Source: Macrostomum lignano
Lineage: Eukaryota
NCBI GenBank assembly: GCA_002269645.1
Contig: NIVC01001626.1
Span: forward strand, 62,001-126,000
Direction of reading: 5' to 3'
Length of the DNA stretch: 64,000 nucleotides
Position 1 is the stretch's first letter. Each line of letters starts with the position of its first letter. Under the pieces are notes generated by a model that was not told the DNA's origin, made no database searches, and worked only from the letters and a program-made list of their open reading frames with translations. The position numbers and the translations under genes were made by a program. Positions 35,141-57,314 of this stretch are shown one piece after another.

Positions 35141-35905
35141 AGCCTACAGTTGTCTGACAATGGGTTGGGAAAGAGTTGCTGCTCCAGCCAGCCTACAGTT
35201 GTCTGACAATGGGTTGGGAAAGAGTTGCTGCTCCAGCCAGCCTACAGTTGTCTGACAATGGGTTGGGAAAGAGTTGCTGCTCCAGCCAGCCTACAGTTGT
35301 CTGACAATGGGTTGGGAAAGAGTTGCTGCTCCAGCCAGCCTACAGTTGTCTGACAATGGGTTGGGAAAGAGTTGCTGCTCCAGCCAGCCTACAGTTGTCT
35401 GACAATGGGTTGGGAAAGAGTTGCTGCTCCAGCCAGCCTACAGTTGTCTGACAATGGGTTGGGAAAGAGTTGCTGCTCCAGCCAGCCTACAGTTGTCTGA
35501 CAATGGGTTGGGAAAGAGTTGCTGCTCCAGCCAGCCTACAGTTGTCTGACAATGGGTTGGGAAAGAGTTGCTGCTCCAGCCAGCCTACAGTTGTCTGACA
35601 ATGGGTTGGGAAAGAGTTGCTGCTCCAGCCTGCCTGTCTGACAATGGGTTGGGAAAGAGTTGCTGCTCCAGCCAGCCTACAGTTGTCTGACAATGGGTTG
35701 GGAAAGAGTTGCTGCTCCAGCCAGCCTACAGTTGTCTGACAATGGGTTGGGAAAGAGTTGCTGCTCCAGCCAGCCTACAGTTGTCTGACAATGGGTTGGG
35801 AAAGAGTTGCTATTCCAGCCAGCCTATAGTTGTCCGAGAATGGGTTGGGAAAGAGTTGCTACTCAAGCCAGCCTGTCTGACAATGTGTTGGGAAAGAGTT
35901 GCTAC
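35141..35905. repeat. 49-bp minisatellite, ~15 copies
   Basis: Unit AGCCTACAGTTGTCTGACAATGGGTTGGGAAAGAGTTGCTGCTCCAGCC. Confidence 0.97.
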
Positions 35906-36421
35906 TCCAGCCAGCTTCTTAAGATTAGCTTTCAGCCAAGCAAACCTGAATTCAAAACCACTAAAAAACGAGCCCACGAACGCAAGACCGAGTATGGCAG
36001 TTTGGAAAGGCCTTCGCAAGTATTGAATTTTAATCGTTTATTTTGATCATCGCGTGAACTGAGAATTACAAAGCTGCTAAACTGAAATAAGAGAGTGGCT
36101 TCATTGCTACTGGCATCTGTCATTAGGTATTGCTGGGAACTAGTTGGTTTTGGACAATGTAGCGAATTTGCTGCGGTGCATATACACGTATTAGTTTGAA
36201 TCACGAATTTTAGGGGTGAGTTTTTGTTCAGTCTTGTTTACCTGCAAAATTAAAGCTAGCAGGATCGCCATAGATACCTTACTATACGAGCGTACAGTGC
36301 GCTAAAAAGCGAGTTCAGGTCAACCTATTAACTAAAAATCAATCAGCTAGTTACATTTAACAGAGGCTTCTAAATTCCTTCCTACAAAATTTTCTGAGGA
36401 TCTGAGTTCTCAAGGCGACCT

Positions 36422-38574: not shown

Positions 38575-39674
38575 ATGGCTCCCGAATTGACAGGCTGCAT
38601 CTGTCTGCTGCTGCTGGTTGCCTGCGGCTCTGCCAGCGTCTGTCCGGAGTGCTCTGCGGTGTACGAACTGCTGACCAGCAGCTGCCCCGCGATTCCGCCT
38701 GGCACCGCGGCTGAGGCTTCGCCCAGCGAGCCGGAGTGCGTGCTCCGCTGCACCCTGAGAAGCGAGTGCCGCCTGTCCGTGTACCTGCGAGACACCGCAG
38801 CCTGCTACTCCCTGCCGGCGGTGGCGTCATCAACCACTTTGGATTGCGGCGCCTCCGGGATGGTTGTTCGCCGTAAGAAGATTTTGCCGTCGGCTGCACT
38901 GACAGCCCTGAGCTTCGCAACGCGGATCGTAATGTTCTACGACTTCAGGAAGGGCTTTGAAAACCTGGCCAACCCTGCCATACTGGTGGCAGAGCCAGTG
39001 AATATTCTGCTAAAGAATTCAATTGACGGAGTTCGCCTGAAAAACTCGACCAGCTCCTATGTGCGAGTGAGCACCCCGGGATTCTACCGGTACTTCTTGT
39101 ACGGACAAAAGTTCAGCATCTTCTTTCAGGGGAAGTTCTCGTCAGACTCTGCGTAAGTCGTTTCCGTGCATTGCTCTATCGAAGACTTCTAACAGATTAG
39201 AGAGGTATGATTAGGAAAACCAAAATATTTGATTCCAGAGACAAATGCATCAGCACCTTCACCGACATGGGCACTCGGCTCCATGACAGCCGCATCCATG
39301 CCCGATCCGATGGAGTGCTGGTAGCTGGCGTCCACTTTCTCAACGGCATGACCTACTCCTCGTCCTGGAGGAGCACTAATGCTCTCACAGTCGACTCCGT
39401 TGAGCGAACGATCACGTTTGGGATAAATTTCGAAGGAAATTCCTTCAGTGCTCAGGCGTATTTGAACGGCACTGTGCTGAGCAGAGCTGGAAGCGGTGGT
39501 GACAGCAACATCACTAAGAAAGAGCTTCTGAACATCCACGACTACCTGCTGCTCGGGCGCTGCACGGATGACTTCATGCAACCGTTGAATGGCTGGCTGA
39601 GGTGCTGGGGCTTCGTCACTGGCAACTTGGGCATCAGCCAGTTTGACCAGCTGAGCAGTCTCTGCAGAGCTTGA
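38575..39674 (+). CDS. Secreted PAN/apple + LamG/concanavalin-like jelly-roll protein; join(38575..39152,39239..39674), 337 aa
   Basis: Signal peptide, PAN pattern ECVLRC....EC..SVY......C, and a phase-2 intron (GC|GTAAGT ... TTCCAG|A) joining two ORFs in frame. The C-terminal half has LamG/pentraxin-like FYDF and LLLGRC...PLNGWLRCWGF...NL. TATA-like TCTATATAA at about 38532. Confidence 0.8.
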
Positions 39675-40571: not shown

Positions 40572-41453
40572 TCAACTTTCTCGGGGCTCCGATGAACCGA
40601 AGCTTTCCTTGGCGCGCTCGCTTGTGGAGCCCTCGCTCACAGCCTCTGAATTGGCCTCACTCTTATTGAGCTTTACTTCAGCCAAAATCGGTGCGTGTGA
40701 GGTGTATTCAGCTTGTTTCTCCAGCATAATCTGCGTCCGTCCGAAGCTGACCTTCTGATTTCCCTGCTTCCTCTGCAGCAGTGCGAAGTTGTCGATTGTT
40801 CTGCCTCCCGTTGAGGTGCCGCCAGGTACATCGCTGGAGAGTGCCAGCTTAAACTCCAGATTCTCCTTTCCTTTTGCAGGCGTGTTATCGAACTTTTCAA
40901 GTATTTCATTCGGCTTCATGTTCCAGTCTCCGCCGATCATGACGGAGTCGACATCTTGACCATAACTCACTATCGCTTCGTGTAAAATCCCATAGGCTTT
41001 CTCCCTATTACTCTTGTGTGGCAGATGAACAGAAAAGTACATCAGGGTCATCCCAGTTTCTTTATGCTTTAGCTTGACAGCCAAATAGCGACCTTCTGCT
41101 GAGATGAAATAGTCCCCAGATTCCTTGTCTTTGCCACTTTCCTCAATCTCTTTCACAGCGAGCTGTTCCCAAACTTTTGGGTCAAACGCAGTCAGGATAT
41201 TTTCTTGCCCCTTGATGTTATCAACTTCGCAACTCCAATTTAATTTGGTCACAAATTCCCGACCAGCATTGATGCTGCTCAACTCAGAGACAGTCAGGAT
41301 GCTCAGCTGCTGTTCTGTTTCTTCCTGGACATCCTTCACCAGCTGCTCGAGACCTCTGGCAAGCTTGTCTCCCTGAAGTTTCTCCATGCGATTGGTCGCA
41401 TCAGCATTGATGGCCAAAGCGAAGAAGCTCGCCGAGTCTTTGCTGGCAGCCAT
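40572..41453 (-). CDS. Stand-alone endonuclease/exonuclease/phosphatase (DNase I-like, EEP) domain protein, 293 aa
   Basis: EEP motifs in the correct order: LAIN, TVSE, GRYLAV, SVHLPH, MIGGDWN, T..G.TIDN and SHAPI. The CDS is intronless, with a predicted 124-bp 5'UTR intron (AAG|GTTAGT at 41579, CTGCAG| at 41456). No adjacent RT. Confidence 0.85.
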   Translation of the reverse strand: MAASKDSASFFALAINADATNRMEKLQGDKLARGLEQLVKDVQEETEQQLSILTVSELSSINAGREFVTKLNWSCEVDNIKGQENILTAFDPKVWEQLAVKEIEESGKDKESGDYFISAEGRYLAVKLKHKETGMTLMYFSVHLPHKSNREKAYGILHEAIVSYGQDVDSVMIGGDWNMKPNEILEKFDNTPAKGKENLEFKLALSSDVPGGTSTGGRTIDNFALLQRKQGNQKVSFGRTQIMLEKQAEYTSHAPILAEVKLNKSEANSEAVSEGSTSERAKESFGSSEPRES

Positions 41454-42973
41454 TTCTGCAGAGAGAGACAGTGCTCACGCTAATACAACACATAGCCCTT
41501 AAATGTTTCACATGGCAATGAGCAATGCTTGCACTCAATAAGAATATGGAAAGCGAAAATAGCAAAAAATGAAACTAACCTTAAGATGCAGTTTTAACTT
41601 CACTTTGGCTTCTGCGAATTCTGCTTCAACTCGGATATTTTGGTGCAATGAAATAATAAGTTTTCTCTCAAGTGCGCAGCAGCTGCAACCCCTGCCATGG
41701 CTTTTAAAAGTTGTTCTGCGTACATTCTTTAATTCTTTAGATTCGAATCGCTTCAGGTTAGCAACTGGTGAGTGCTTTTCCTTCTGCACTCGCTACTGCG
41801 AAGATTTGAGTACAGGTAGCTTGGTCGACAGTGCGAGCTATTCGTACACGATTACAGGGTAGCAAGCCCGCGAGTACTTTGCTCTCCTAGACTCTGGCCT
41901 GCACAAAAAACATAAGTTCCCCCACAGAACCCGAGTTCGCACGCAATTGTTATTTTTTCCAATGACTGCAATAAACTCCAACTGTGACCCTTCAGCAGTG
42001 TACACGGACGGCGAAAGCAGAAAGCAAAATAAATGTCTACTGATGTCTACTGACATCAATCTGATGCCTGATGTCAAAATAAATAGCTTGTGTAACTGAA
42101 GGCTTTCTTAGCCGTCTGGTTCGGCAGTTCAAACACGCTGACGATTTCAATGCTTTGCGTCAGTCAAATCTGGTGTTGTTTTCCAACACCCCCGCATGGA
42201 TGCTGACGGTCACTGCTGGATTTCAACTGCTCCAGCATCATTTGTGAGGCAGATGCCAATAGTTCAAGTGGGGATGAGTGGCAGAAGGATTTACTAACGG
42301 GATATGAGTGGCTGACATGTCGCGCTCTATAGTCGATCTTGTCTTTACTGTTTGCTATTCCGGGACGTCCAAGGCTTGTTTGAAACAGCCGGTTGCCAAG
42401 GGCGCGGTTTGGTTGAAACACCTGCTGTGAGCTTATTCGCTGCAGTTCCAAGATTTCTTTGTCTAACATTTCATTTTGCAGCCAATACTTTGCCATAGGA
42501 GTAAAAACTGAGTTTGGATTGATTGACACGCGAGGCTGGCCCTACAAAGTGCTTGAGACCGAACTGGTAGCAACCCCATCAATCGGCTAGCGAAGGAACT
42601 TTTGCTCTGAACTTGACTATTTCTCACATTGACTGCATTCTATATTTATTCAAACTGGCCATGCGTTCCATTGGCTTTAAATTTCGAAGTTTAAACGCAA
42701 ATTTTACTCTAAGCTGCCCGGATGATCAGCAGCGGAAGCCTGACCCTGCCTGGCATGTAGCCAACGCAACGATTTGTGAAATTGTTATTTTGTTAATTTT
42801 GAACGCAAATAGGCACAAAACTGATTAAAGTCTTTAAAGATGGCTCCGTTGTTTGCTGCATTTTATAAGAAAAACTGCAACGCCGATGACCTCATCTGAA
42901 TGAACTGTGCAGTATCCGATCTGTGTGGTCAATTTAGCCATCATACAATGTACATTAGACATTATAATGTACG

Positions 42974-45900
42974 GTTTGCACCTGACTTAGCGTGCACCAG
43001 TGTCTGTAGCCTAAATGTGTTTGTACCTGACTTAGCGTGCACCAACCAGTGTCTGTAGCCTAAATGTGTTTGTACCTGACTTAGCGTGCACCAACCATTG
43101 TCTGTAGCCTAAATATGTTTGTACCTGACTTAGCGTGCACCAACCATTGTCTGTAGCCTAAATGTGTTTGTACCTGACTTAGCGTGCACCAACCAGTGTC
43201 TGTAGCCTAAATGTGTTTGCACCTGACTTAGCGTGCACCAACCAGTGTCTGTAGCCTAAATGTGTTTGCACCTGACTTAGCGTGCACCAACCAGTGTCTG
43301 TAGCCTAAATGTGTTTGCACCTGACTTAGCGTGCACCAACCAGTGTCTGTAGCCTAAATGTGTTTGCACCTGACTTAGCGTGCACCAACCAGTGTCTGTA
43401 GCCTAAATGTGTTTGTACCTGACTTAGCGTGCACCAACCAGTGTCTGTAGCCTAAATGTGTTTGTACCTGACTTAGCGTGCACCAGTGTCTGTAGCCTAA
43501 GTGTGTTTGCACCTGACTTAGCGTGCACCAGTGTCTGTAGCCTAAGTGTGTTTGCACCTGACTTAGCGTGCACCAACCAGTGTCTGTAGCCTAAATGTGT
43601 TTGTACCTGACTTAGCGTGCACCAGTGTCTGTAGCCTAAATGTGTTTGCACCTGACTTAGCGTGCACCAGTGTCTGTAGCCTAACTGTGTTTGCACCTGA
43701 CTTAGCGTGAACCAACCAGTGTCTGTAGCCTAACTGTGTTTGCACCTGACTTAGCGTGAACCAACCAGTGTCTGTAGCCTAACTGTGTTTGCACCTGACT
43801 TAGCGTGCACCAGTGTCTGTAGCCTAAGTGTGTTTGCACCTGACTTAGCGTGAACCAACCAGTGTCTGTAGCCTAAGTGTGTTTGCACCTGACTTAGCGT
43901 GAACCAACCAGTGTCTGTAGCCTAAGTGTGTTTGCACCTGACTTAGCGTGAACCAACCAGTGTCTGTAGCCTAAGTGTGTTTGCACCTGACTTAGCGTGC
44001 ACCAGTGTCTGTAGCCTAAGTGTGTTTGCACCTGACTTAGCGTGCAACCAGTGTCTGTAGCCTAAGTGTGTTTGCACCTGACTTAGCGTGCACCAGTGTC
44101 TGTAGCCTAAGTGTGTTTGCACCTGACTTAGCGTGCACCAGTGTCTGTAGCCTAAGTGTGTTTGCACCTGACTTAGCGTGAACCAACCAGTGTCTGTAGC
44201 CTAAGTGTGTTTGCACCTGACTTAGCGTGAACCAACCAGTGTCTGTAGCCTAACTGTGTTTGCACCTGACTTAGCGTGAACCAACCAGTGTCTGTAGCCT
44301 AACTGTGTTTGCACCTGACTTAGCGTGCACCAGTGTCTGTAGCCTAAGTGTGTTTGCACCTGACTTAGCGTGCACCAGTGTCTGTAGCCTAAGTGTGTTT
44401 GCACCTGACTTAGCGTGCACCAGTGTCTGTAGCCTAAGTGTGTTTGCACCTGACTTAGCGTGCCAACCAGTGTCTGTAGCCTAAGTGTGTTTGCACCTGA
44501 CTTAGCGTGCACCAGTGTCTGTAGCCTAAGTGTGTTTGCACCTGACTTAGCGTGCACCAGTGTCTGTAGCCTAAGTGTGTTTGCACCTGACTTAGCGTGC
44601 ACCAGTGTCTGTAGCCTAAGTGTGTTTGCACCTGACTTAGCGTGCACCAGTGTCTGTAGCCTAAGTGTGTTTGCACCTGACTTAGCGTGCACCAGTGTCT
44701 GTAGCCTAAGTGTGTTTGCACCTGACTTAGCGTGCACCAGTGTCTGTAGCCTAAGTGTGTTTGCACCTGACTTAGCGTGCACCAGTGTCTGTAGCCTAAG
44801 TGTGTTTGCACCTGACTTAGCGTGCACCAGTGTCTGTAGCCTAAGTGTTTGCACCTGACTTGCGTGCACCAGTGTCTGTAGCCTAAGTGTGTTTGCACCT
44901 GACTTAGCGTGCACCAGTGTCTGTAGCCTAAGTGTGTTTGCACCTGACTTAGCGTGCACCAGTGTCTGTAGCCTAAGTGTGTTTGCACCTGACTTAGCGT
45001 GCACCAGTGTCTGTAGCCTAAGTGTGTTTGCACCTGACTTGCGTGCACCAGTGTCTGTAGCCTAAGTGTGTTTGCACCTGACTTGCGTGCACCAGTGTCT
45101 GTAGCCTAAGTGTGTTTGCACCTGACTTAGCGTGCACCAGTGTCTGTAGCCTAAGTGTGTTTGCACCTGACTTAGCGTGCACCAGTGTCTGTAGCCTAAG
45201 TGTGTTTGCACCTGACTTAGCGTGCACCAGTGTCTGTAGCCTAAGTGTGTTTGCACCTGACTTAGCGTGCACCAGTGTCTGTAGCCTAAGTGTGTTTGCA
45301 CCTGACTTAGCGTGCACCAGTGTCTGTAGCCTAAGTGTGTTTGCACCTGACTTGCGTGCACCAGTGTCTGTAGCCTAAGTGTGTTTGCACCTGACTTAGC
45401 GTGCACCAGTGTCTGTAGCCTAAGTGTGTTTGCACCTGACTTGCGTGCACCAGTGTCTGTAGCCTAAGTGTGTTTGCACCTGACTTAGCGTGCACCAGTG
45501 TCTGTAGCCTAAGTGTGTTTGCACCTGACTTAGCGTGCACCAGTGTCTGTAGCCTAAGTGTGTTTGCACCTGACTTAGCGTGCACCAGTGTCTGTAGCCT
45601 AAGTGTGTTTGCACCTGACTTGCGTGCACCAGTGTCTGTAGCCTAAGTGTGTTTGCACCTGACTTGCGTGCACCAGTGTCTGTAGCCTAAGTGTGTTTGC
45701 ACCTGACTTGCGTGCACCAGTGTCTGTAGCCTAAGTGTGTTTGCACCTGACTTAGCGTGCACCAGTGTCTGTAGCCTAAGTGTGTTTGCAACTGACTTGC
45801 GTGCACCAGTGTCTGTAGCCTAAGTGTGTTTGCACCTGACTTGCGTGCACCAGTGTCTGTAGCCTAAGTGTGTTTGCACCTGACTTAGCGTGCACCAGTG

Positions 45901-48575
45901 TCTGTAGCCTAAGTGTGTTTGCACCTGACTTAGCGTGCACCAACCAGTGTCTGTAGCCTAAGTGTGTTTGCACCTGACTTAGCGTGCACCAGTGTCTGTA
46001 GCCTAAGTGTGTTTGCACCTGACTTAGCGTGAACCAATCAGTGTCTGTAGCCTAAGTGTGTTTGCACCTGACTTAGCGTGCAACCAGTGTCTGTAGCCTA
46101 AGTGTGTTTGCACCTGACTTAGCGTGCACCAGTGTCTGTAGCCTAAGTGTGTTTGCACCTGACTTAGCGTGAACCAACCAGTGTCTGTAGCCTAAGTGTG
46201 TTTGCACCTGACTTAGCGTGCACCAGTGTCTGTAGCCTAAGTGTATTTGCACCTGACTTAGCGTGCACCAGTGTCTGTAGCCTAACTGTGTTTGCACCTG
46301 ACTTAGCGTGCACCAGTGTCTGTAGCCTAAGTGTGTTTGCACCTGACTTAGCGTGCACCAGTGTCTGTAGCCTAACTGTGTTTGCACCTGACTTAGCGTG
46401 CACCAGTGTCTGTAGCCTAAGTGTGTTTGCACCTGACTTAGCGTGAACCAACCAGTGTCTGTAGCCTAAGTGTGTTTGCACCTGACTTAGCGTGCACCAG
46501 TGTCTGTAGCCTAAGTGTGTTTGCACCTGACTTAGCGTGCACCAGTGTCTGTAGCCTAAGTGTGTTTGCACCTGACTTAGCGTGCACCAGTGTCTGTAGC
46601 CTAAGTGTGTTTGCACCTGACTTAGCGTGCACCAGTGTCTGTAGCCTAAGTGTGTTTGCACCTGACTTAGCGTGCACCAGTGTCTGTAGCCTAAGTGTGT
46701 TTGCACCTGACTTAGCGTGCACCAGTGTCTGTAGCCTAAGTGTGTTTGCACCTGACTTAGCGTGCACCAGTGTCTGTAGCCTAAGTGTGTTTGCACCTGA
46801 CTTAGCGTGCACCAGTGTCTGTAGCCTAAGTGTGTTTGCACCTGACTTAGCGTGCACCAGTGTCTGTAGCCTAAGTGTGTTTGCACCTGACTTAGCGTGC
46901 ACCAGTGTCTGTAGCCTAAGTGTGTTTGCACCTGACTTAGCGTGAACCAACCAGTGTCTGTAGCCTAAGTGTGTTTGCACCTGACTTAGCGTGAACCAGT
47001 GTCTGTAGCCTAAGTGTGTTTGCACCTGACTTGGCGTGCACCAGTGTCTGTAGCCTAAGTGTATTTGCACCTGACTTAGCGTGAACCAACCAGTGTCTGT
47101 AGCCTAAGTGTGTTTGCACCTGACTTGCGTGCACCAGTGTCTGTAGCCTAAGTGTATTTGCACCTGACTTAGCGTGCACCAGTGTCTGTAGCCTAAGTGT
47201 GTTTGCACCTGACTTAGCGTGCACCAGTGTCTGTAGCCTAAGTGTATTTGCACCTGACTTAGCGTGCACCAGTGTCTGTAGCCTAACTGTGTTTGCACCT
47301 GACTTAGCGTGCACCAGTGTCTGTAGCCTAAGTGTGTTTGCACCTGACTTAGCGTGAACCAACCAGTGTCTGTAGCCTAAGTGTGTTTGCACCTGACTTA
47401 GCGTGCACCAGTGTCTGTAGCCTAAGTGTGTTTGCACCTGACTTAGCGTGCACCAGTGTCTGTAGCCTAAGTGTGTTTGCACCTGACTTGCGTGCACCAG
47501 TGTCTGTAGCCTAAGTGTGTTTGCACCTGACTTGCGTGCACCAGTGTCTGTAGCCTAAGTGTGTTTGCACCTGACTTGCGTGCACCAGTGTCTGTAGCCT
47601 AAGTGTGTTTGCACCTGACTTGCGTGCACCAGTGTCTGTAGCCTAAGTGTGTTTGCACCTGACTTGCGTGCACCAGTGTCTGTAGCCTAAGTGTGTTTGC
47701 ACCTGACTTGCGTGCACCAGTGTCTGTAGCCTAAGTGTGTTTGCACCTGACTTAGCGTGCACCAGTGTCTGTAGCCTAAGTGTGTTTGCACCTGACTTAG
47801 CGTGCACCAGTGTCTGTAGCCTAAGTGTGTTTGCACCTGACTTGCGTGCACCAGTGTCTGTAGCCTAAGTGTGTTTGCACTGACTTGCGTGCACCAGTGT
47901 CTGTAGCCTAAGTGTGTTTGCACCTGACTTGCGTGCACCAGTGTCTGTAGCCTAAGTGTGTTTGCACCTGACTTGCGTGCACCAGTGTCTGTAGCCTAAG
48001 TGTGTTTGCACCTGACTTGCGTGCACCAGTGTCTGTAGCCTAAGTGTGTTTGCACCTGACTTAGCGTGCACCAGTGTCTGTAGCCTAAGTGTGTTTGCAC
48101 CTGACTTAGCGTGCACCAGTGTCTGTAGCCTAAGTGTGTTTGCACCTGACTTGGCGTGCACCAACCAGTGTCTGTAGCCTAAGTGTGTTTGCACCTGACT
48201 TAGCGTGCACCAGTGTCTGTAGCCTAAGTGTGTTTGCACCTGACTTGGCGTGCACCAACCAGTGTCTGTAGCCTAAGTGTGTTTGCACCTGACTTGCGTG
48301 CACCAGTGTCTGTAGCCTAAGTGTGTTTGCACCTGACTTGGCGTGCACCAGTGTCTGTAGCCTAAGTGTGTTTGCACCTGACTTAGCGTGAACCAACCAG
48401 TGTCTGTAGCCTAAATGTGTTTGCACCTGACTTAGCGTGCACCAGTGTCTGTAGCCTAAGTGTGTTTGCACCTGACTTAGCGTGCACCAGTGTCTGTAGC
48501 CTAAGTGTTTGCACCTGACTTGGCGTGCACCAGTGTCTGTAGCCTAAGTGTGTTTGCACTGACTTGCGTGCACCA
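42974..48575. repeat. ~5.6-kb satellite of a 45-bp monomer (44- and 49-bp variants), roughly 120 copies
   Basis: Unit GCACCTGACTTAGCGTGCACCAGTGTCTGTAGCCTAAGTGTGTTT; source of the HAKSGANTLRLQTLV ORFs. Confidence 0.98.
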
Positions 48576-49436
48576 GTAGCCTAATGTGTGCAGTTAGCGA
48601 CAGTGTCTGCCTGGGTTCAGACTTCAACACCAGTAGCAATGTTTTGCTACGCGGAAGTTCTCCATGTTGCTGCAGCTTCACATTTCGTGGCGCACCTGCA
48701 CTCAAAGTCTCTCTAAGTGTTTGCAAACAGCAACAATTTAGCTGTGGCAGACTTCACTGAAGCCAGTCAACATAAGTCTGTTGCAAGTTCCAGGTTAGCC
48801 GTCGCAGACTCCGGCAGATGAAGCTAGTTTCAAGCATAGTCTCATTATCGCCAAGTTGCCAGGGACTGTCCGCTTTGTCTTAAGCAGCAGGAGCCATTGA
48901 CAGTGCTCCAACCCTCAAGGCCCAAAATATTTGCTGAGCTTGGGTTTTTTGCGTTCTCCAACTCAAAAAGCATTCAAAGCGAAATTTGCAATTTGCCAAG
49001 GGTTGGCGGGTTGTGGAGTTTTTGGCCTACGTATCTGGAGAATACTCATCATTTCGGGACTCAATACTCACTTCAATACTCACTTCAATTAAAGTACGGC
49101 GGGAACTTTAATTGGCAGGGAAGCTCCGGTGCTGGTGCAAGACTTGACGCTGCTTGAACTCAGGAATTTTGAAATCAGATGATTCTGTCCTTGAGTTTCT
49201 CTCGGCAGCTTGCAGAGCGGCTTCAATGCACGAATATTCAATTCGACCAGCCTCCAACTCTCTGATCCAAGCCTGTGATTGGCTCTCATATTCTGAGTCT
49301 GAATCTTTGTCAAACTGGAGCACATCTCCAATCCAGGAGCCAGATTGAGAACACCATGCACGCCATCCCTAGCAACCATCTCTATTAAAGCAGCTGCAGA
49401 TGAAGGAATCGTATGCGCATTGCGCAGGACGGAAAG

Positions 49437-51914
49437 ATGGCGAAGCAATTGACTGTCCGTTATGTCTTCTATCTGCTGCTTTTGGTTTGCTGCGGCACTG
49501 AAGCTGCCTGCGAACAGTGCTCTGCCGTGTTTGAGCTGCGGACCAGCGACTGCCCGACCGCTCCTTTTGCGACTGCTCCTGTTGCGGCTCAAAGTGAGTC
49601 GGAGTGCGTGCTGCGCTGCACTCTCAGCCCCGAGTGCCGGCTGTCCGTGTACCTGACTGACAGTGCCGAATGCTACAGCCTGCCGGCAGCCGCTCTGACA
49701 GCTGATGGACCATCGACTGCATTGACGACACAATCCATCGAACCACCGACGACGGCTACTACTACAACACCGAGTACTACGACTACCACACCGACTACGA
49801 CAACTACCACACCAACTACTACTACCACACCGACTACTACCACGACACCGACTACTACTACGACTACCACACCGACTACAACGACTACCACACCGACTAC
49901 TACAACAACGACCACACCCACTACTACGACGACTACCACACCGACTACTACGACGACTACTACACCGACTACGACTACCACATCGACTACGACGACTACC
50001 ACACCGACTACGACGACTACCACATCGACTACGACGACTACCACACCTACAACTACGACGACTACACCGACTACAACGACGACTACTACACCGACTACGA
50101 CTACCACACCGACTACTACGACGACTACCACACCGACTACGACTACCACACCGACTACAACGACTACCACACCGACTACTACTACTACGACCACACCCAC
50201 TACTACTACGACTACCACACCGACTACTACTACCACACCGACTACGACGAATACACCGACTACAACGACTACTACACCGACTACTACGACGACGACTACA
50301 CCGACTACAACGACTACCACACCGACTACTACAACGACACCGACTACTACGACTACCACACCTACAACTACGACGACTACACCGACTACAACGACTACCA
50401 CACCGACTACAACGACTACCACACCGATTACTACAACGACACCGACTACTACGACTACCACACCTACAACTACGACGACTACACCGACTACAACGACTAC
50501 CACACCGACTACAACGACCACCACACCGACTACTACAACTACCACACCGACTACAACGACTACCACACCGACTACTACGACTACCACACCGACTACAACG
50601 ACGACTACGACACCTACAACCACGACTACCACACCAACTACAACGACTACTACCTCACCGAGTACTACGACTACGATACCGACTACTACTACAACGACCA
50701 CATCCACTACTACTACGACTGCCACACCGACTACTACGACTACCACACCTAAAACTACGACTACCACACCGACTACCACGACTGCCACACCGATTGCTAC
50801 GATTACTACAACACCGACTACTATGACTACCACACCGACTACTACAACTACCACACCGACTACTACAACTACCACACCGACTACTACGACAACTACCACA
50901 CCGACTACTACGACGACCAAACCGACTACAACGACACCCACTACAACGACTACCACACCGACTACTACTACCACCACACCGACTACTACTACCACCACAC
51001 CGACTACTACAACTACCACACCGACTACAACGACGACTACGACACCTACAACCACGACTACCACACCGACTACAACGACTACCACCCCGACTACTACGAC
51101 GACCACACCGACTACTACGACCACCATACCGACTACTACGACGACTACCACACCAACTACTACGACGACTACCACACCGACTACAACGACTACCACCCCG
51201 ACTACTACGACTACCACACCGACTACAACGACTACCACACCGACTACTACGACGACCACACCGACTACAACGACGACCACACCGACTACTACGATCACCA
51301 TACCGACTACTACGACGACTACCACACCGACTACAACGACGACCACACCGACTACTACGACCACCACACCGACTACTACAACTACCACACCGACTACAAC
51401 GACGACTACGACACCTACAACCACGACGACCACACCGACTACAACGACGACCACACCGACTACTACGACCACCACACCGACTACTAGAACTACCACACCG
51501 ACTACAACGACGACTACGACACCTACAACCACGACTACCACACCGACTACAACGACTACCACCCCGACTACTACGACGACTACCACACCAACTACTACGA
51601 CGACTACCACACCGTCTACAACGACGACCACACCGACTACTACGACCACCATACCGACTACTACGACGACTACCACACCAACTACTACGACGACCACCAC
51701 ACCGATTACTACGACTACCCCACTGACTACTGCGACTACCACACCGACTACTACGACGACGACTGCACCGACTACGACGATTACCACACCGAATACCACT
51801 GAGACTACACCGTTTATTACAGCGCCTTCGTCTCCTATGATGACGTCATTTGTAATTAATTTGCCTAACAACTGCGGCTCAAGAATGGTTGTCCGCTGGA
51901 AGCTGGCCCCCTAG
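49437..51914 (+). CDS. Secreted PAN/apple-domain mucin (Thr/Pro-rich), 825 aa from ATG 49437
   Basis: Signal peptide and PAN domain clearly paralogous to 38575 (CSAV.EL.TS.CP; ECVLRCTL..ECRLSVYL.D.A.CYSLPA), with the same GAAAGATGG start context. The ~2.1-kb PTTTT region varies at third positions while keeping Thr. It ends CGSRMVVRWKLAP*. Confidence 0.85.
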   Translation: MAKQLTVRYVFYLLLLVCCGTEAACEQCSAVFELRTSDCPTAPFATAPVAAQSESECVLRCTLSPECRLSVYLTDSAECYSLPAAALTADGPSTALTTQSIEPPTTATTTTPSTTTTTPTTTTTTPTTTTTPTTTTTPTTTTTTTPTTTTTTPTTTTTTTPTTTTTTTPTTTTTTTPTTTTTSTTTTTTPTTTTTTSTTTTTTPTTTTTTPTTTTTTTPTTTTTPTTTTTTTPTTTTTPTTTTTTPTTTTTTTPTTTTTTTPTTTTTPTTTNTPTTTTTTPTTTTTTTPTTTTTTPTTTTTPTTTTTTPTTTTTTPTTTTTTPTTTTTTPITTTTPTTTTTTPTTTTTTPTTTTTTPTTTTTTPTTTTTTPTTTTTTPTTTTTTPTTTTTTTPTTTTTTPTTTTTTSPSTTTTIPTTTTTTTSTTTTTATPTTTTTTPKTTTTTPTTTTATPIATITTTPTTMTTTPTTTTTTPTTTTTTPTTTTTTTPTTTTTKPTTTTPTTTTTTPTTTTTTPTTTTTTPTTTTTTPTTTTTTTPTTTTTTPTTTTTTPTTTTTTPTTTTTIPTTTTTTTPTTTTTTTPTTTTTTPTTTTTTPTTTTTTPTTTTTTPTTTTTTPTTTITIPTTTTTTTPTTTTTTPTTTTTTPTTTTTTPTTTTTTTPTTTTTTPTTTTTTPTTTTTTPTTRTTTPTTTTTTTPTTTTTTPTTTTTTPTTTTTTTPTTTTTTTPSTTTTTPTTTTTIPTTTTTTTPTTTTTTTPITTTTPLTTATTTPTTTTTTAPTTTITTPNTTETTPFITAPSSPMMTSFVINLPNNCGSRMVVRWKLAP

Positions 51915-52177: not shown

Positions 52178-55100
52178 GCTGTGTGCGTGAGCTGTGTGTG
52201 CATGAGCTGTGTGTGCATGAGCTGTGTGTGCATGAGCTGTGTGTGCATGAGCTGTGTGCGTGAGCTGTGTGTGCATGAAGTGTGTGTGCATGAGCTGTGT
52301 GTGCATGAGCTGTGTGTGCATGAAGTGTGTGTGCATGAGGTGTGTGCATGAGCTGTGTGTGCATGAGCTGTGTGTGCATGAGCTGTGTGTGCATGAGCTG
52401 TGTGTGCATGAGCTGTGTGTGCATGAGCTGTGTGTGCATGAGCTGTGTGTGCATGAGCTGTGTGCGTGAGCTGTGTGTGCATGAGGTGTGTGTGCATGAG
52501 CTGTGTGTGCATGAGCTGTGTGTGCATGAGCTGTGTGTGCATGAGCTGTGTGTGCATGAAGTGTGTGTGCATGAGCTGTGTGTGCATGAGCTGTGTGTGC
52601 ATGAGGTGTGTGTGCATGAGCTGTGTGTGCATGAGGTGTGTGTGCATGAGCTGTGTGTGCATGAGGTGTGTGTGCATGAGCTGTGTCTGCATGAGCTGTG
52701 TGTGCATGAGGTGTGTGTGCATGAGCTGTGTGTGCATGAGCTGTGTGTGCATGAGGTGTGTGTGCATGAGCTGTGTGTGCATGAGCTGTGTCTGCATGAG
52801 CTGTGTGTGCATGAGGTGTGTGTGCATGAGCTGTGTCTGCATGAGCTGTGTGTGCATGAGCTGTGTGTGCATGAGCTGTGTGTGCATGAGCTGTGTGTGC
52901 ATGAGCTGTGTGTGCATGAGCTGTGTGTGCATGAGCTGTGTGTGCATGAGCTGTGTGTGCATGAGGTGTGTGTGCATGAGCTGTGTGTGCATGAGGTGTG
53001 TGCATGAGGTGTGTGTGCATGAGCTGTGTGTGCATGAGCTGTGTGTGCATGAGCTGTGTGTGCATGAGCTGTGTCTGCATGAGCTGTGTGTGCATGAGCT
53101 GTGTGTGCATGAGGTGTGTGTGCATGAGCTGTGTGTGCATGAGGTGTGTGTGCATGAGCTGTGTGTGCATGAGCTGTGTGTGCATGAGCTGTGTGTGCAT
53201 GAGGTGTGTGTGCATGAGCTGTGTGTGCATGAGCTGTGTGTGCATGAGGTGTGTGTGCATGAGCTGTGTGTGCATGAGGTGTGTGCATGAGCTGTGTGTG
53301 CATGAGCTGTGTGTGCATGAGCTGTGTGTGCATGAGCTGTGTGTGCATGAGCTGTGTGTGCATGAGCTGTGTGTGCATGAGCTGTGTGTGCATGAGCTGT
53401 GTGTGCATGAGCTGTGTGTGCATGAGGTGTGTGTGCATGAGCTGTGTGTGCATGAGGTGTGTGCATGAGGTGTGTGTGCATGAGCTGTGTGTGCATGAGC
53501 TGTGTGTGCATGAGCTGTGTGTGCATGAGGTGTGGGTGCATGAGCTGTGTGTGCATGAGCTGTGTCTGCATGAGCTGTGTGTGCATGAGGTGTGTGTGCA
53601 TGAGCTGTGTGTGCATGAAGTGTGTGTGCATGAGCTGTGTGTGCATGAGGTGTGTGTGCATGAGCTGTGTGTGCATGAGGTGTGTGTGCATGAGCTGTGT
53701 CTGCATGAGCTGTGTGTGCATGAGCTGTGTCTGCATGAGCTGTGTCTGCATGAGCTGTGTGTGCATGAGCTGTGTGTGCATGAGCTGTGTGTGCATGAGC
53801 TGTGTGTGCATGAGGTGTGTGCATGAGCTGTGTGTGCATGAGCTGTGTGTGCATGAGCTGTGTGTGCATGAGCTGTGTGTGCATGAGCTCTGTGTGCATG
53901 AGGTGTGTGTGCATGAGCTGTGTGTGCATGAGCTGTGTGTGCATGAGGTGTGTGCATGAGCTGTGTGTGCATGAGGTGTGTGTGCATGAGCTGTGTGTGC
54001 ATGAGGTGTGTGTGCATGAGCTGTGTGTGCATGAGCTGTGTGTGCATGAGGTGTGTGCATGAGCTGTGTGTGCATGAAGTGCGTGTGCATGAGCTGTGTG
54101 TGCATGAGGTGTGTGCATGAGCTGTGTGTGCATGAGCTGTGTGTGCATGAGCTGTGTGTGCATGAGCTGTGTGTGCATGAGCTGTGTGTGCATGAGGTGT
54201 GTGTGCATGAGCTGTGTGTGCATGAGCTGTGTGTGCATGAGGTGTGTGTGCATGAGCTGTGTGTGCATGAGCTGTGTCTGCATGAGCTGTGTGTGCATGA
54301 GGTGTGTGTGCATGAGCTGTGTGTGCATGAGCTGTGTGTGCATGAGGTGTGTGTGCATGAGCTGTGTGTGCATGAGGTGTGTGTGTATGAGCTGTGTGTG
54401 CATGAGGTGTGTGCATGAGCTGTGTGTGCATGAGCTGTGTGTGCATGAGGTGTGTGTGCAGAAGCTGTGTGTGCATGAAGTGTGTGTGCATGAGGTGTGT
54501 GTGCATGAGCTGTGTGTGCATGAGCTGTGTGTGCATGAGCTGTGTGTGCATGAGCTGTGTGTGCATGAGGTGTGTGTGCATGAGCTGTGTGTGCATGAGC
54601 TGTGTGTGCATGAGCTGTGTGTGCATGAGCTGTGTGTGCATGAGCTGTGTCTGCATGAGCTGTGTGTGCATGAGGTGTGTGTGCATGAGCTGTGTCTGCA
54701 TGAGCTGTGTGTGCATGAGCTGTGTGTGCATGAGCTGTGTGTGCATGAGCTGTGTCTGCATGAGCTGTGTGTGCATGAGCTGTGTGTGCATGAGCTGTGT
54801 GTGCATGAGGTGTGTGTGCATGAGGTGTGTGTGCATGAGCTGTGTCTTCATGAGCTGTGTGTGCATGAGGTGTGTGTGCATGAGCTGTGTGTGCATGAGG
54901 TGTGTGTGCATGAGCTGTGTGTGCATGAGCTGTGTCTGCATGAGCTGTGTGTGCATGAGGTGTGTGTGCATGAGCTGTGTGTGCATGAGCTGTGTGTGCA
55001 TGAGCTGTGTGTGCATGAGGTGTGTGTGCATGAGCTGTGTGTGCATGAGGTGTGTGTGCATGAGCTGTGTGTGCATGAGGTGTGTGTGCATGAGCTGTGT

Positions 55101-56935
55101 CTGCATGAGCTGTGTGTGCATGAGGTGTGTGTGCATGAGCTGTGTGTGCATGAGCTGTGTGTGCATGAGGTGTGTGTGCATGAGCTGTGTGTGCATGAGC
55201 TGTGTCTGCATGAGCTGTGTGTGCATGAGGTGTGTGTGCATGAGCTGTGTCTGCATGAGCTGTGTGTGCATGAGCTGTGTGTGCATGAGGTGTGTGCATG
55301 AGCTGTGTGTGCATGAGCTGTGTGTGCATGAGCTGTGTGTGCATGAGCTGTGTGTGCATGAGCTGTGTGTGCATGAGGTGTGTGTGCATGAGCTGTGTGT
55401 GCATGAGGTGTGTGCATGAGGTGTGTGTGCATGAGCTGTGTGTGCATGAGCTGTGTGTGCATGAGCTGTGTGTGCATGAGCTGTGTCTGCATGAGCTGTG
55501 TGTGCATGAGCTGTGTGTGCATGAGGTGTGTGTGCATGAGCTGTGTGTGCATGAGGTGTGTGTGCATGAGCTGTGTGTGCATGAGCTGTGTGTGCATGAG
55601 CTGTGTGTGCATGAGGTGTGTGTGCATGAGCTGTGTGTGCATGAGCTGTGTGTGCATGAGCTGTGTGTGCATGAGCTGTGTCTGCATGAGCTGTGTGTGC
55701 ATGAGCTGTGTGTGCATGAGGTGTGTGTGCATGAGCTGTGTGTGCATGAGGTGTGTGTGCATGAGCTGTGTGTGCATGAGCTGTGTGTGCATGAGCTGTG
55801 TGTGCATGAGGTGTGTGTGTGTGCATGAGCTGTGTGTGCATGAGCTGTGTGTGCATGAGGTGTGTGTGCATGAGCTGTGTGTGCATGAGGTGTGTGTGCA
55901 TGAGCTCTGTGTGCATGAGCTGTGTGTGCATGAGCTGTGTGTGCATGAGGTGTGTGCATGAGGTGTGTGTGCATGAGCTGTGTGTGCATGAGCTGTGTGT
56001 GCATGAGCTGTGTGTGCATGAGCTGTGTGTGCATGAGCTGTGTGTGCATGAGGTGTGTGCATGAGCTGTGTGTGCATGAGCTGTGTGTGCATGAGCTGTG
56101 TGTGCATGAGCTGTGTGTGCATGAGCTCTGTGTGCATGAGGTGTGTGTGCATGAGCTGTGTGTGCATGAGCTGTGTGTGCATGAGGTGTGTGCATGAGCT
56201 GTGTGTGCATGAAGTGTGTGTACATGAGCTGTGTGTGCATGAGGTGTGTGTGCATGAGCTGTGTGTGCATGAGCTGTGTGTGCATGAGGTGTGTGCATGA
56301 GCTGTGTGTGCATGAAGTGCGTGTGCATGAGCTGTGTGTGCATGAGGTGTGTGCATGAGCTGTGTGTGCATGAGCTGTGTGTGCATGAGCTGTGTGTGCA
56401 TGAGCTGTGTGTGCATGAGCTGTGTGTGCATGAGGTGTGTGTGCATGAGCTGTGTGTGCATGAGCTGTGTGTGCATGAGGTGTGTGTGCATGAGCTGTGT
56501 GTGCATGAGCTGTGTCTGCATGAGCTGTGTGTGCATGAGGTGTGTGTGCATGAGCTGTGTGTGCATGAGCTGTGTGTGCATGAGGTGTGTGTGCATGAGC
56601 TGTGTGTGCATGAGGTGTGTGTGTATGAGCTGTGTGTGCATGAGGTGTGTGCATGAGCTGTGTGTGCATGAGCTGTGTGTGCATGAGGTGTGTGTGCAGA
56701 AGCTGTGTGTGCATGAAGTGTGTGTGCATGAGGTGTGTGTGCATGAGCTGTGTGTGCATGAGCTGTGTGTGCATGAGCTGTGTGTGCATGAGCTGTGTGT
56801 GCATGAGGTGTGTGTGCATGAGCTGTGTGTGCATGAGCTGTGTGTGCATGAGCTGTGTGTGCATGAGCTGTGTGTGCATGAGGTGTGTGTGCATGAGCTG
56901 TGTGTGCATGAGGTGTGTGTGCATGAGCTATGTGA
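52178..56935. repeat. ~4.75-kb 15-bp satellite (GCATGAGCTGTGTGT)n with 13-bp variants and a 2238-bp higher-order duplication
   Basis: Rare variants recur at a 2238-bp offset (GCAGAAG at 54461 and 56699; ORF starts 53817/56055 and 54409/56647). Confidence 0.97.
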
Positions 56936-57299: not shown

Positions 57300-57314
57300 C
57301 CGCAAGCGGGAGAG

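What the first reader, a model, noticed from the sequence alone, without database searches (positions are those of the whole stretch)
40572..41453. Orphan DNase I-fold (EEP) gene with CdtB/APE-like motifs, no reverse transcriptase and an altered SDH motif
Seen: an intronless 293-aa EEP domain with a predicted spliceosomal 5'UTR intron, which argues for an integrated host gene. The metal-binding Glu (VSE), GDWN and the terminal His are present, but SDH reads TSH. No RT ORF lies on either side. Known: EEP domains occur in LINE ORF2 APE endonucleases and in bacterial enzymes. CdtB toxins have similar motif strings (WMIxGDFN, T..SG.TLDY, SDH.P) and have been horizontally acquired by insects. Inference: a domesticated retrotransposon endonuclease or a horizontally acquired nuclease/phosphatase sitting among secreted-protein genes. 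There is no signal peptide.
Basis: partly seen in the sequence, partly recalled or inferred. Interest (0 to 1): 0.7.

Follow-up and report, generated by a model that had tools for sequence, protein, structure and literature searches.

The report
Divergent DNase-I-fold hydrolase gene in flatworm
This is an intact host gene of the flatworm Macrostomum lignano for a small intracellular DNase-I-fold (EEP) enzyme from an unstudied, patchily distributed eukaryotic family; it is not a transposon remnant or a bacterial-toxin relative, so it is mildly interesting rather than remarkable.

Summary
The ORF is real: window 40572-41453, minus strand, 293 aa. The window is Macrostomum lignano contig NIVC01001626.1.

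A confident AlphaFold model (pLDDT 89.9) matches EEP enzymes at Foldseek probability 1.0. TDP2, DNase I and nocturnin rank top, all at only 12-16% identity.

It is not an orphan. An exhaustive HMM search finds 86 related clusters. Named members come from Euglena, Gloeochaete, Mantoniella and Lapot transcriptomes; the rest are environmental eukaryotic contigs.

All canonical catalytic residues are conserved (N16, D18, E57, E84, H143, D176, N178, D221, H253). The "SDH" Asp is Ser or Thr in 47 of 67 full-length members and Asp in only 3, so "TSH" is a family hallmark, not a lesion.

No RT, no further copies in the window, no signal peptide. A second copy lies in a collinear duplicated segment. 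It has lost its first ATG; dN/dS between the copies is about 0.5.

The LINE-endonuclease and CdtB readings are not supported. Horizontal acquisition is neither shown nor excluded.

Best reading: a Mg2+-dependent phosphodiesterase, probably acting on nucleic acid, with altered metal coordination. Substrate unknown. Interest is low to moderate.

The parts
40572..41453 (-). Single-exon CDS, 293 aa plus stop: EEP (DNase-I-fold) catalytic domain at residues about 7-265, then a disordered tail
   Evidence: ORF list. Identical to the called gene on M. lignano NIVC01001626.1. AlphaFold2 pLDDT 89.9, pTM 0.86. Foldseek EEP hits at probability 1.00.
41456..41579 (-). Predicted 124-nt spliceosomal intron in the 5'UTR (donor AAG|GTTAGT, acceptor CTCTCTCTGCAG|AA followed by ATG). 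The acceptor could alternatively serve spliced-leader trans-splicing.
   Evidence: Sequence reading and script. About 99% identical in the paralogous locus L001. Not verified with RNA data.
41580..41714 (-). Putative non-coding first exon; the 5' limit is unknown. The alignment to the paralog is interrupted by an indel at 41714.
   Evidence: Alignment of window and L001. Inference only.
41388..41414 (-). Motif I, A-I-N16-A-D18-A-T-N-R22: first-strand Asn plus Asp (the N-x-D seen in APE1 and TDP2) and a family-specific Arg
   Evidence: Of 90 aligned sequences, N16 is present in 71, D18 in 73 and R22 in 60; most of the remainder are gaps in partial sequences.
41274..41294 (-). Motif II, T-V-S-E57-L-S-S: metal-binding Glu
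   Evidence: E in 82 of 90. Aligned to the Glu of DNase I 'LIQEV' and of 3g6s 'GMQEV'.
41202..41204 (-). E84 codon: acidic residue predicted to pair with H143
   Evidence: D or E in 68 of 86 non-gap members. Aligned to the Glu of DNase I 'KERYLFLF'; its identity as DNase I Glu78 is from my own knowledge.
41076..41093 (-). G-R-Y123-L-A-V: family-conserved G-[KR]-Y strand
   Evidence: G in 74, K or R in 82, Y in 79 of 90.
41013..41033 (-). S-V-H143-L-P-H-K147: second catalytic-site His and a conserved Lys
   Evidence: H143 is invariant in 90 of 90; P145 in 83; K147 in 70. Aligned to the DNase I 'ALHSAP' His and the 3g6s 'NTHFDH' His.
40920..40934 (-). G-G-D176-W-N178: the canonical GDxN motif
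   Evidence: G175 in 89, D176 in 88, N178 in 88 of 90. Aligned to GDFN of DNase I, 3g6s and the TDP2-like P0091.
40785..40823 (-). G-G-T213-S214-T-G-G-R-T-I-D221-N222-F: a 'TT' phosphate-contact-like motif, plus the Asp predicted to pair with the terminal His
   Evidence: T213 in 71, T or S at 214 in 75, D221 in 80, N222 in 81 of 90. The 'TT' aligns to DNase I 'DTTAT'.
40686..40706 (-). Y-T-S252-H253-A-P255-I: terminal catalytic His. The Asp of the canonical S-D-H is Ser here.
   Evidence: H253 in 81 and P255 in 81 of 90. Among 67 full-length members, position 252 is S in 31, T in 16 and D in only 3.
40575..40658 (-). Acidic, Ser-rich, disordered C-terminal tail (residues 266-293). In the paralog it is expanded by 25 codons of SEGAT repeats.
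   Evidence: pLDDT 44-78 in the last three 10-residue blocks. Composition. Indel.

Best explanation
The locus is a bona fide nuclear gene of Macrostomum lignano. It encodes a small, stand-alone, intracellular enzyme of the endonuclease/exonuclease/phosphatase (EEP, DNase-I-like) superfamily.

The gene belongs to a previously uncharacterised, highly divergent subfamily. That subfamily is scattered among microbial eukaryotes (Euglenozoa, Glaucophyta, Chlorophyta, Rhizaria and many environmental eukaryotic contigs).

Shown:
- The fold.
- Conservation of the whole catalytic constellation.
- The family-wide replacement of the 'SDH' Asp by Ser or Thr.
- The host-gene status.

Inferred mechanism: a divalent-metal-dependent phosphodiesterase.
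- E57, with D18 of the N-x-D motif, holds the metal. S252 replaces the usual third acidic ligand, so coordination is probably looser or water-mediated.
- The D221-H253 pair and the E84-H143 pair act as in DNase I: one activates water and stabilises the transition state, the other acts as the acid.
- N16, D176 and N178 position the scissile phosphate.
- R22, K/R122, Y123, K147 and T213/S214 contact substrate phosphates.

The most likely substrate class is a nucleic-acid phosphodiester, that is DNA or RNA end-processing or nicking in the manner of TDP2 or DNase I. The exact substrate is unknown.

The gene is not derived from a LINE endonuclease or from a CdtB toxin.
For: Identity and host status:
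- The gene is called on a 258-kb M. lignano contig.
- A second copy, 91% identical over the aligned part, sits on a 639-kb contig whose flanks are collinear at 94-97% identity.
- A conserved GT-AG 5'UTR intron is predicted.
- Only one copy is present in the window.

Fold:
- AlphaFold2 with a 90-sequence alignment gives pLDDT 89.9.
- Foldseek against PDB gives probability 1.00. Top hits are TDP2 (E 3e-12, TM 0.57/0.69), DNase I, nocturnin, bacterial EEPs, CNOT6L, synaptojanin 5-phosphatase and EEPD1.

Sequence:
- In a profile search of PDB, 25 of the 26 listed hits are EEP enzymes, and the Glu, His, GDFN and TT motifs align in register with DNase I.
- hhalign of the family profile to P0091 gives 96.5% probability and E 1e-9. 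P0091 carries a precomputed PF03372 domain, and all 12 of its significant PDB hits are TDP2.

Family:
- 86 clusters at E <= 0.001.
- Catalytic columns are invariant or nearly so.
- Taxon labels are all eukaryotic.
- The nearest outgroup gene lies in a GC-rich, gene-dense eukaryotic contig and appears to contain an intron.

Nucleic-acid hint:
- One member (P0052) carries an N-terminal CCHC zinc knuckle. All five PDB hits to it are zinc knuckles, the best being TUT7 at E 0.003.
- The 'TT' motif aligns to the DNA-contacting DTTAT of DNase I.

Constraint:
- The ORF is intact and every catalytic residue is kept in both copies.
- dN/dS is 0.51 (Fisher p = 0.045).
Against: - No biochemical or expression data exist for any member.
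- Fold similarity to TDP2, DNase I, nocturnin, inositol 5-phosphatase and CCR4-type enzymes is about equal (TM 0.5-0.7, 12-16% identity). The substrate therefore cannot be read from the nearest neighbour; nocturnin, for example, acts on NADP(H) and the 5-phosphatases act on lipids.
- The Asp of SDH matters in TDP2 and DNase I. This is my own knowledge of those enzymes; a mouse Tdp2 D358N mutant structure appears. Ser or Thr there may mean reduced or different chemistry.
- Evidence for purifying selection between the two worm copies is only marginal.
- The second copy has lost its first ATG.
- The zinc-knuckle fusion is seen in one distant member only.
- The Pfam EEP model does not hit the protein in the precomputed tables.
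Confidence: 0.6

Rival explanations
1. Same enzyme, but the gene entered the Macrostomum lineage by horizontal transfer from a microbial eukaryote. It was then domesticated (5'UTR intron, host composition) before the segmental or whole-genome duplication that produced the two copies.
For: - The only named animal carrying the family is M. lignano. All other taxon labels are protists or algae.
- The best non-flatworm relatives are only 31-40% identical.
- The CDS is intronless.
Against: - Most family members are unlabelled environmental or Logan contigs, and some could be animals.
- The NJ tree is star-like, so the worm genes do not nest inside any donor clade.
- MMETSP and EukProt transcriptome labels can reflect contaminants (my own knowledge).
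- A family present in four or more eukaryotic supergroups is equally compatible with ancient origin and repeated loss.
Confidence: 0.3
2. It is an EEP hydrolase that does not act on nucleic acids. It could be a lipid phosphodiesterase or phosphatase, or a small-molecule phosphatase, like neutral sphingomyelinase, inositol 5-phosphatase or nocturnin.
For: - Nocturnin, synaptojanin 5-phosphatase and SMPD2 appear among the fold and profile hits at scores close to the nucleases.
- The worm protein has no nucleic-acid-binding accessory domain.
Against: - The best sequence bridge to canonical EEPs is a TDP2-type protein.
- Top Foldseek ranks are TDP2 and DNase I.
- The TT motif aligns with the DNase I DNA-contact motif.
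- One member has a CCHC knuckle fusion.
- There is no membrane anchor or hydrophobic loop.
Confidence: 0.2
3. It is a catalytically impaired pseudo-enzyme, a binding protein that uses the EEP scaffold, because the SDH Asp is lost.
For: - S252 replaces the Asp.
- The sister copy has lost its start codon.
- dN/dS of about 0.5 is fairly relaxed.
Against: - Every other catalytic residue is invariant or nearly so across members sharing about 20-35% identity. That is hard to explain without catalysis.
- The Ser/Thr is itself conserved in 47 of 67 members, suggesting a functional replacement.
Confidence: 0.1
4. It is a domesticated or truncated non-LTR retrotransposon (LINE) APE-type endonuclease.
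For: - LINE ORF2 proteins begin with an EEP domain of similar size (my own knowledge).
- An L1-type endonuclease chimera (2v0r) appears among the marginal profile hits at E 0.039.
Against: - There is no RT ORF or remnant in the flanks.
- There are only two copies, in collinear segments.
- The strand motif has His, not the Tyr-x-Pro-Asn of APE/L1 enzymes (plus my own knowledge).
- L1 endonuclease is absent from the Foldseek top 50.
- Relatives are single genes in protists without RT.
Confidence: 0.03
5. It is a horizontally acquired CdtB-type genotoxin subunit, as reported for some insects.
For: - There is a sub-threshold hit to the NCBIfam CdtB family model (E 0.026) over residues 138-245.
- It shares generic GDxN, TT and terminal-His motifs with CdtB.
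Against: - The score is 13.7 bits against a cut-off of 189.
- CdtB chains rank below DNase I, nocturnin, ExoIII and TDP2, at E 0.44-0.98, and are absent from the Foldseek top 50.
- There is no signal peptide.
- There are no cdtA or cdtC neighbours.
- All relatives are eukaryotic.
Confidence: 0.02

Closest known systems
Tyrosyl-DNA phosphodiesterase 2 (TDP2/TTRAP)
   Same: - Best Foldseek matches (E 3e-12, TM up to 0.70 on the target).
- The family profile links to a TDP2-type protein at 96.5% hhalign probability.
- Shares N-x-D in the first strand, the metal Glu, a His in the middle strand motif, GDxN and a terminal His.
   Different: - Only 12-14% identity.
- No detectable hit with the single sequence; the profile gives E 0.06.
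- The SDH Asp is Ser.
- No N-terminal UBA-type extension.
- Family-specific R22, G-[KR]-Y and H-L-P-H-K motifs.
- Not an orthologue.
DNase I
   Same: - Same fold (Foldseek E 1e-11).
- The profile alignment puts E57, E84, H143, D176/N178 and the TT motif on the DNase I metal Glu, the His-partner Glu, the second catalytic His, GDFN and DTTAT. This suggests a two-His active site.
   Different: - Intracellular: no signal peptide.
- No evidence of DNase I disulfide or Ca2+ sites.
- Profile E-value only 0.03.
- The SDH Asp is replaced.
Nocturnin and CCR4/CNOT6L deadenylase-type EEPs
   Same: Comparable fold scores (E 3.5e-11 to 1.2e-10) and marginal profile hits (E 0.043).
   Different: - No leucine-rich or other accessory region.
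- A different motif set.
- Nothing that specifically ties the family to them.
Bacterial EEP proteins of unknown function (PDB 3g6s, 3mpr, 3l1w)
   Same: - 3g6s is the best profile hit (E 0.011), aligned from the first-strand Asn through GDFN.
- Similar size, single domain.
   Different: - These are bacterial and have canonical motifs.
- Their function is equally unknown, so they add no mechanistic information.
LINE ORF2 APE-type endonuclease and bacterial CdtB
   Same: Same superfamily and generic motif order.
   Different: - No RT, not repetitive, and His instead of Tyr-x-Pro-Asn (against LINE).
- Far below the CdtB model cut-off, no signal peptide, no partner subunits (against CdtB).
- No CdtB sequence was fetched or typed; only library models and PDB hit tables were used.

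Membership tests
EEP (DNase-I-like) superfamily | Four-layer alpha/beta-sandwich fold | tested here: met
   AlphaFold2 pLDDT 89.9. Foldseek probability 1.00 to many EEP structures, with 181 chains at E <= 0.001.
EEP (DNase-I-like) superfamily | Conserved catalytic set: first-strand Asn, metal Glu, GDxN, Asp-His pair with a terminal His | tested here: met
   N16, E57, D176/N178, D221 and H253 are invariant or nearly so across 90 sequences and lie in register with DNase I and 3g6s.
EEP (DNase-I-like) superfamily | Asp in the terminal S-D-H motif | tested here: not met
   S252 in the worm protein. Among 67 full-length members: S 31, T 16, D 3.
EEP (DNase-I-like) superfamily | Match to the Pfam model PF03372 | tested here: inconclusive
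   The precomputed Pfam column is empty for P0001-P0004. However, the family profile aligns to a PF03372-bearing protein at 96.5% hhalign probability, and one source names the paralog 'Endonuclease/exonuclease/p...'.
TDP2 | Sequence-level orthology to TDP2 | tested here: not met
   phmmer against PDB finds nothing at E <= 10. Profile E is 0.06-1.3 for TDP2 chains. Identity is 12-14% in the structural alignments.
TDP2 | Catalytic Asp preceding the terminal His (mouse D358) | tested here: not met
   Ser at position 252.
TDP2 | N-terminal ubiquitin-association domain (metazoan TDP2) | tested here: not met
   The catalytic fold's first strand starts at residue 7, so there is no N-terminal extension.
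TDP2 | 5'-phosphotyrosyl-DNA phosphodiesterase activity | not testable with these tools
   Needs an enzyme assay.
DNase I family | Two-His active site with acidic partners (Glu-His and Asp-His) | tested here: met
   E84 and H143 align to the DNase I Glu and His. D221 and H253 are conserved. Their pairing is inferred, not measured.
DNase I family | Secreted protein with a signal peptide | tested here: not met
   No hydrophobic N-terminus.
DNase I family | Significant sequence similarity | tested here: inconclusive
   Profile E 0.03. Foldseek E 1e-11 at 14% identity.
CdtB (cytolethal distending toxin subunit B) | Score above the curated cut-off of the NCBIfam CdtB model | tested here: not met
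   13.7 bits against a cut-off of 189, covering residues 138-245 only.
CdtB (cytolethal distending toxin subunit B) | Signal peptide and adjacent cdtA/cdtC-type partner genes | tested here: not met
   No signal peptide. Flanking ORFs have no family hits.
Non-LTR retrotransposon APE-type endonuclease | Reverse transcriptase downstream in the same element | tested here: not met
   No RT-like ORF within about 15 kb. Flanking ORFs have no NCBIfam hits. Caveat: NCBIfam is a prokaryote-oriented library, so a badly degraded LINE RT could be missed.
Non-LTR retrotransposon APE-type endonuclease | Many dispersed genomic copies | tested here: not met
   Two proteins in the M. lignano annotation, lying in collinear segments. 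One copy in the window. The whole genome could not be searched at DNA level.
Non-LTR retrotransposon APE-type endonuclease | Tyr-x-Pro-Asn strand motif typical of APE1, ExoIII and L1-EN | tested here: not met
   The position is the invariant His of S-V-H-L-P. The APE motif itself is from my own knowledge, not from a tool.

The most novel reading that the evidence does not exclude
The worm gene is the first animal representative of an undescribed EEP subfamily, defined by N-x-D-x-[ST]-N-R, G-[KR]-Y, H-L-P-H-K, TT...DN and [ST]-H-x-P. In this subfamily a conserved Ser or Thr has replaced the canonical metal-ligand Asp. That would imply a distinct metal stoichiometry or a substrate class not yet seen among EEP enzymes. 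The flatworm lineage would have obtained the gene from a microbial eukaryote.
Probability: 0.2. Interest if true: 0.5.

Novelty: new variant of a known kind. Interest (0 to 1): 0.3.

Why it matters
The EEP superfamily supplies many DNA-repair, RNA-decay, signalling and toxin enzymes, and small active-site changes have repeatedly produced new substrate specificities.

This family is invisible to the Pfam model and has no studied member. It systematically lacks one canonical acidic residue, so it is a reasonable candidate for a new specificity. Macrostomum lignano has RNAi and transgenesis, which makes it a tractable organism for asking what the family does.

If horizontal origin were shown, it would add a eukaryote-to-animal transfer case.

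As it stands, this is one more uncharacterised hydrolase. It is worth a line in an annotation and a cheap enzyme screen, but it is not a surprise to a specialist.

Tried and rejected
1. Single-sequence searches: PDB phmmer found nothing. NCBIfam gave only sub-threshold noise, including CdtB at 13.7 bits.
2. AlphaFold2 with the 3-sequence alignment gave pLDDT 39 and was unusable. It was repeated with 90 sequences.
4. The word-indexed profile search with A3 was capped at 8000 candidates and returned only 7 proteins.
5. The viral structure library gave giant-virus and phage EEPs at the same distance as PDB (10-17% identity). There is no closer viral relative, so a viral origin was dropped.
6. The idea that the family is transposon-borne arose because one 90% cluster has 39 members. 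Those copies lie once per roughly 17-kb repeated unit in an unidentified eukaryote. No RT or transposase ORF is present, and the rest of the unit is low-complexity sequence. The idea was rejected as evidence for a mobile element, although intron-containing genes could have been missed.
They were replaced by a scan of the ten longest flanking ORFs, which gave no hits.
8. Accessory-domain readings:
   - The HTH-like N-terminus of P0109 was not supported (best E 0.12, an IS21 transposase model).
   - The SAP-like repeats of P0046 were not supported.
   - Only the CCHC knuckle of P0052 was supported.
9. Literature: there is no paper mentioning Mlig009936. Nothing relevant came up under Macrostomum plus horizontal gene transfer.
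10. The tRNA-like 58-bp array at 61612-62052 contains no tRNA gene according to ARAGORN.

Full report
**What is there**

- Window 40572-41453 (minus strand) is an uninterrupted 293-aa ORF from ATG to stop.
- The identical protein is a called gene on Macrostomum lignano assembly GCA_002269645.1, contig NIVC01001626.1, which is 258 kb long. The window is therefore flatworm nuclear DNA.
The canonical S-D-H reads T-S-H. I checked the coordinates by reverse-complementing the printed DNA.

**Gene model**

- A 124-nt GT...AG interval lies at 41456-41579 (AAG|GTTAGT ... CTCTCTCTGCAG|AA-ATG), immediately upstream of the start codon.
- An in-frame stop precedes the ATG whether or not this interval is removed.
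- The interval is almost identical in the paralogous locus.
- It is a prediction. M. lignano uses spliced-leader trans-splicing (my own knowledge), so the same acceptor could serve trans-splicing instead.
- The protein has no hydrophobic segment (maximum 19-residue Kyte-Doolittle mean 0.74). It ends in an acidic, Ser-rich tail.

**Fold**

- The single sequence finds nothing in PDB. In NCBIfam it finds only noise, including a 13.7-bit match to the CdtB model, whose cut-off is 189.
- A 3-sequence alignment gave a useless model (pLDDT 39).
- An exhaustive HMMER search of 1.84 billion cluster representatives found 86 relatives at E <= 0.001, 26 of them at E <= 1e-10.
- With 90 aligned sequences, AlphaFold2 gave pLDDT 89.9 and pTM 0.86. 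Only the last 28 residues or so are disordered.
- Foldseek against PDB returns EEP enzymes only, at probability 1.00: TDP2 (E 3e-12), DNase I, nocturnin, three bacterial EEPs of unknown function, CNOT6L, synaptojanin 5-phosphatase and EEPD1.
- All of these are at 12-16% identity and TM 0.5-0.7. No CdtB or L1 endonuclease is among the top 50.
- The viral library gives giant-virus EEPs at the same distance.

**Sequence link to canonical EEPs**

- In a profile search of PDB, 25 of the 26 listed hits are EEP enzymes, each at marginal E (0.011-1.3).
- The printed alignments place the family's Glu, its acidic residue 84, the invariant His143, GDFN and the TT motif on the corresponding DNase I residues.
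- hhalign of the family profile against P0091 gives 96.5% probability and E 1e-9.
- P0091 carries a precomputed PF03372 domain, and all 12 of its significant PDB hits are TDP2.
- Fold and sequence therefore agree. This is a deep EEP branch whose nearest characterised neighbours are the TDP2 and DNase I types.

**The family**

Conserved columns in the worm numbering, as counts of 90 aligned sequences unless stated:

| Position | Count |
|---|---|
| N16 | 71 |
| D18 | 73 |
| R22 | 60 |
| E57 | 82 |
| D/E84 | 68 of 86 |
| G121 | 74 |
| K/R122 | 82 |
| Y123 | 79 |
| H143 | 90 |
| P145 | 83 |
| K147 | 70 |
| G175 | 89 |
| D176 | 88 |
| N178 | 88 |
| T213 | 71 |
| T/S214 | 75 |
| D221 | 80 |
| N222 | 81 |
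| H253 | 81 |
| P255 | 81 |

- Most of the shortfall from 90 at N16, D18 and R22 is gaps in partial sequences.
- At position 252, the Asp of S-D-H in other EEPs, 67 full-length members have Ser 31, Thr 16 and Asp only 3.
- The precomputed Pfam column is empty for the members listed.

**Who carries it**

- Taxon-labelled members come from transcriptomes of Lapot gusevi, Mantoniella beaufortii, Euglena gracilis and Gloeochaete wittrockiana.
- The rest are environmental or Logan contigs.
- The worm protein's best outgroup clade (P0003/P0088, P0124, P0007; 35-40% identity) includes a gene on a GC-rich (66%) gene-dense contig. That contig's neighbouring ORFs end in what I read as MYND-type zinc fingers. 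The EEP reading frame there is restored by removing a short GT...AG interval.
- The relatives are therefore eukaryotic nuclear genes.
- A neighbour-joining tree is star-like and resolves no donor clade.

**Copies in the worm**

- A second protein (BOX15_Mlig009936g1, 296 aa) lies on another contig. Its flanks are collinear with the window at 94-97% identity, including the adjacent 45-bp satellite.
- This is a segmental or whole-genome duplicate, not a transposed copy.
- In that copy the first codon is ATA instead of ATG. The annotated protein therefore starts at Met23 and lacks the N16/D18/R22 motif. Its tail carries 25 extra codons of SEGAT repeats.
- dN/dS between the copies is 0.51 (Fisher p = 0.045).
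- dS is 0.04 in codons 1-165 but 0.20 in codons 166-265. This indicates a mosaic history, most simply gene conversion of the 5' part.
- tblastn finds no other copy in the window.

**Surroundings**

- The gene sits in about 7 kb of unique DNA between tandem arrays (35141-35915 and 42974-48577).
- Flanking ORFs are secreted or mucin-like. 38575-39156 and 49413-51914 share a signal-like N-terminus and a Cys-rich domain at 66% identity, and the latter continues into a Thr/Pro repeat.
- No ORF resembles RT. The ten longest flanking ORFs hit no NCBIfam model.

**Mechanism**

- Shown: the fold and the conservation of the catalytic constellation.
- Inferred from established EEP enzymology (DNase I, APE1, TDP2):
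  - A divalent metal is held by E57 and D18.
  - The Asp221-His253 and Glu84-His143 pairs act on the scissile phosphate and the water.
  - N16, D176 and N178 position the phosphate.
  - S252 replaces the third acidic ligand, so metal binding is probably weaker or water-mediated.
- A nucleic-acid substrate is favoured by four things:
  - the TDP2 and DNase I neighbours;
  - the TT motif aligning to the DNase I DNA-contact motif;
  - several conserved basic residues;
  - a CCHC zinc knuckle fused to one member.
- This is suggestive only. Nocturnin and the 5-phosphatases score almost as well.

**Verdict on the interpretation**

- The LINE-endonuclease reading fails on RT, on copy number and on the strand motif.
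- The CdtB reading fails on the model score, the signal peptide, the partner genes and the ranking.
- Horizontal acquisition from a microbial eukaryote remains possible but undemonstrated.
- The EEP identity is already implied by one source's name for the paralog, "Endonuclease/exonuclease/p...".
- What is new is the delimitation of the family and its Ser/Thr-His hallmark.
- I found no publication on the gene.

**Side observation**

- In one unidentified eukaryote a family member is present once per roughly 17-kb repeated unit, with 39 near-identical proteins.
- Those copies read Lys where the catalytic His should be.
- No transposon genes were seen in the unit.

Noticed in passing
L001 9935-10891 (paralogous locus on M. 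lignano NIVC01000386.1), compared with window 40572-41453: The sister copy has ATA in place of the first ATG, so its annotated protein starts at Met23 and lacks the first catalytic motif. Its C-terminal tail has 25 extra codons of SEGAT repeats.
   Followed up: yes
window 40659-40958 (codons 166-265) versus 40959-41453 (codons 1-165): Synonymous divergence between the two worm copies is five-fold higher in the 3' third of the catalytic domain (dS 0.20) than in the 5' two-thirds (dS 0.04). The intron and UTR are about 99% identical. This is a mosaic history that suggests gene conversion.
   Followed up: partly
window 42974-48577: A 45-bp tandem array of about 123 copies at 96% identity lies directly beside the gene. 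It is also present at the paralogous locus.
   Followed up: partly
window 38575-39156 (+) and 49413-51914 (+): Two ORFs on either side of the EEP gene share a signal-peptide-like N-terminus and a Cys-rich domain (66% identity over 74 residues). The second continues into about 700 residues of Thr/Pro mucin-like repeats.
   Followed up: partly
window 1-1724, 17421-20406, 52180-56934, 57304-58147, 58719-59903 and others: The window is unusually rich in long tandem arrays: TATC x425, CACATC x498, a 15-mer x319 and about thirty more. These create many long spurious ORFs on both strands.
   Followed up: no
window 61612-62052: A 58-bp tandem repeat contains GGTTCGAATCC, which resembles a tRNA T-arm. 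ARAGORN finds no tRNA gene there, so it may be a tRNA-derived satellite or SINE remnant.
   Followed up: partly
L006-L009 (ENA ERZ25068633, contigs up to 1.34 Mb; EEP gene at 10001-10714 in each): In an unidentified eukaryote the family member occurs once per roughly 17-kb repeated unit, with 39 proteins at 90% identity or more. The units are 90-97% identical and otherwise low-complexity. These copies have Lys where the catalytic His is expected.
   Followed up: partly
L010 6513-7311 (Logan SRR33270676, 8.3-kb contig, GC 66%): The closest outgroup gene is split into 168-aa and 88-aa calls. Removing a short GT...AG interval (for example 82 nt) restores one ORF that aligns end to end with P0088. 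By my reading of the sequences, neighbouring ORFs end in MYND-type zinc fingers. The source is a compact GC-rich eukaryote of unknown identity.
   Followed up: partly
Proteins P0010, P0013, P0018, P0020 (N-termini) and P0052 (residues 2-18): Four family members begin with a Cys-rich motif, M-x-C-x-C-C-G...G-C-S-C...H-x-C, of unknown nature. P0052 begins with a classical CCHC zinc knuckle, and its PDB hits are TUT7, Air2 and retroviral nucleocapsid knuckles.
   Followed up: partly
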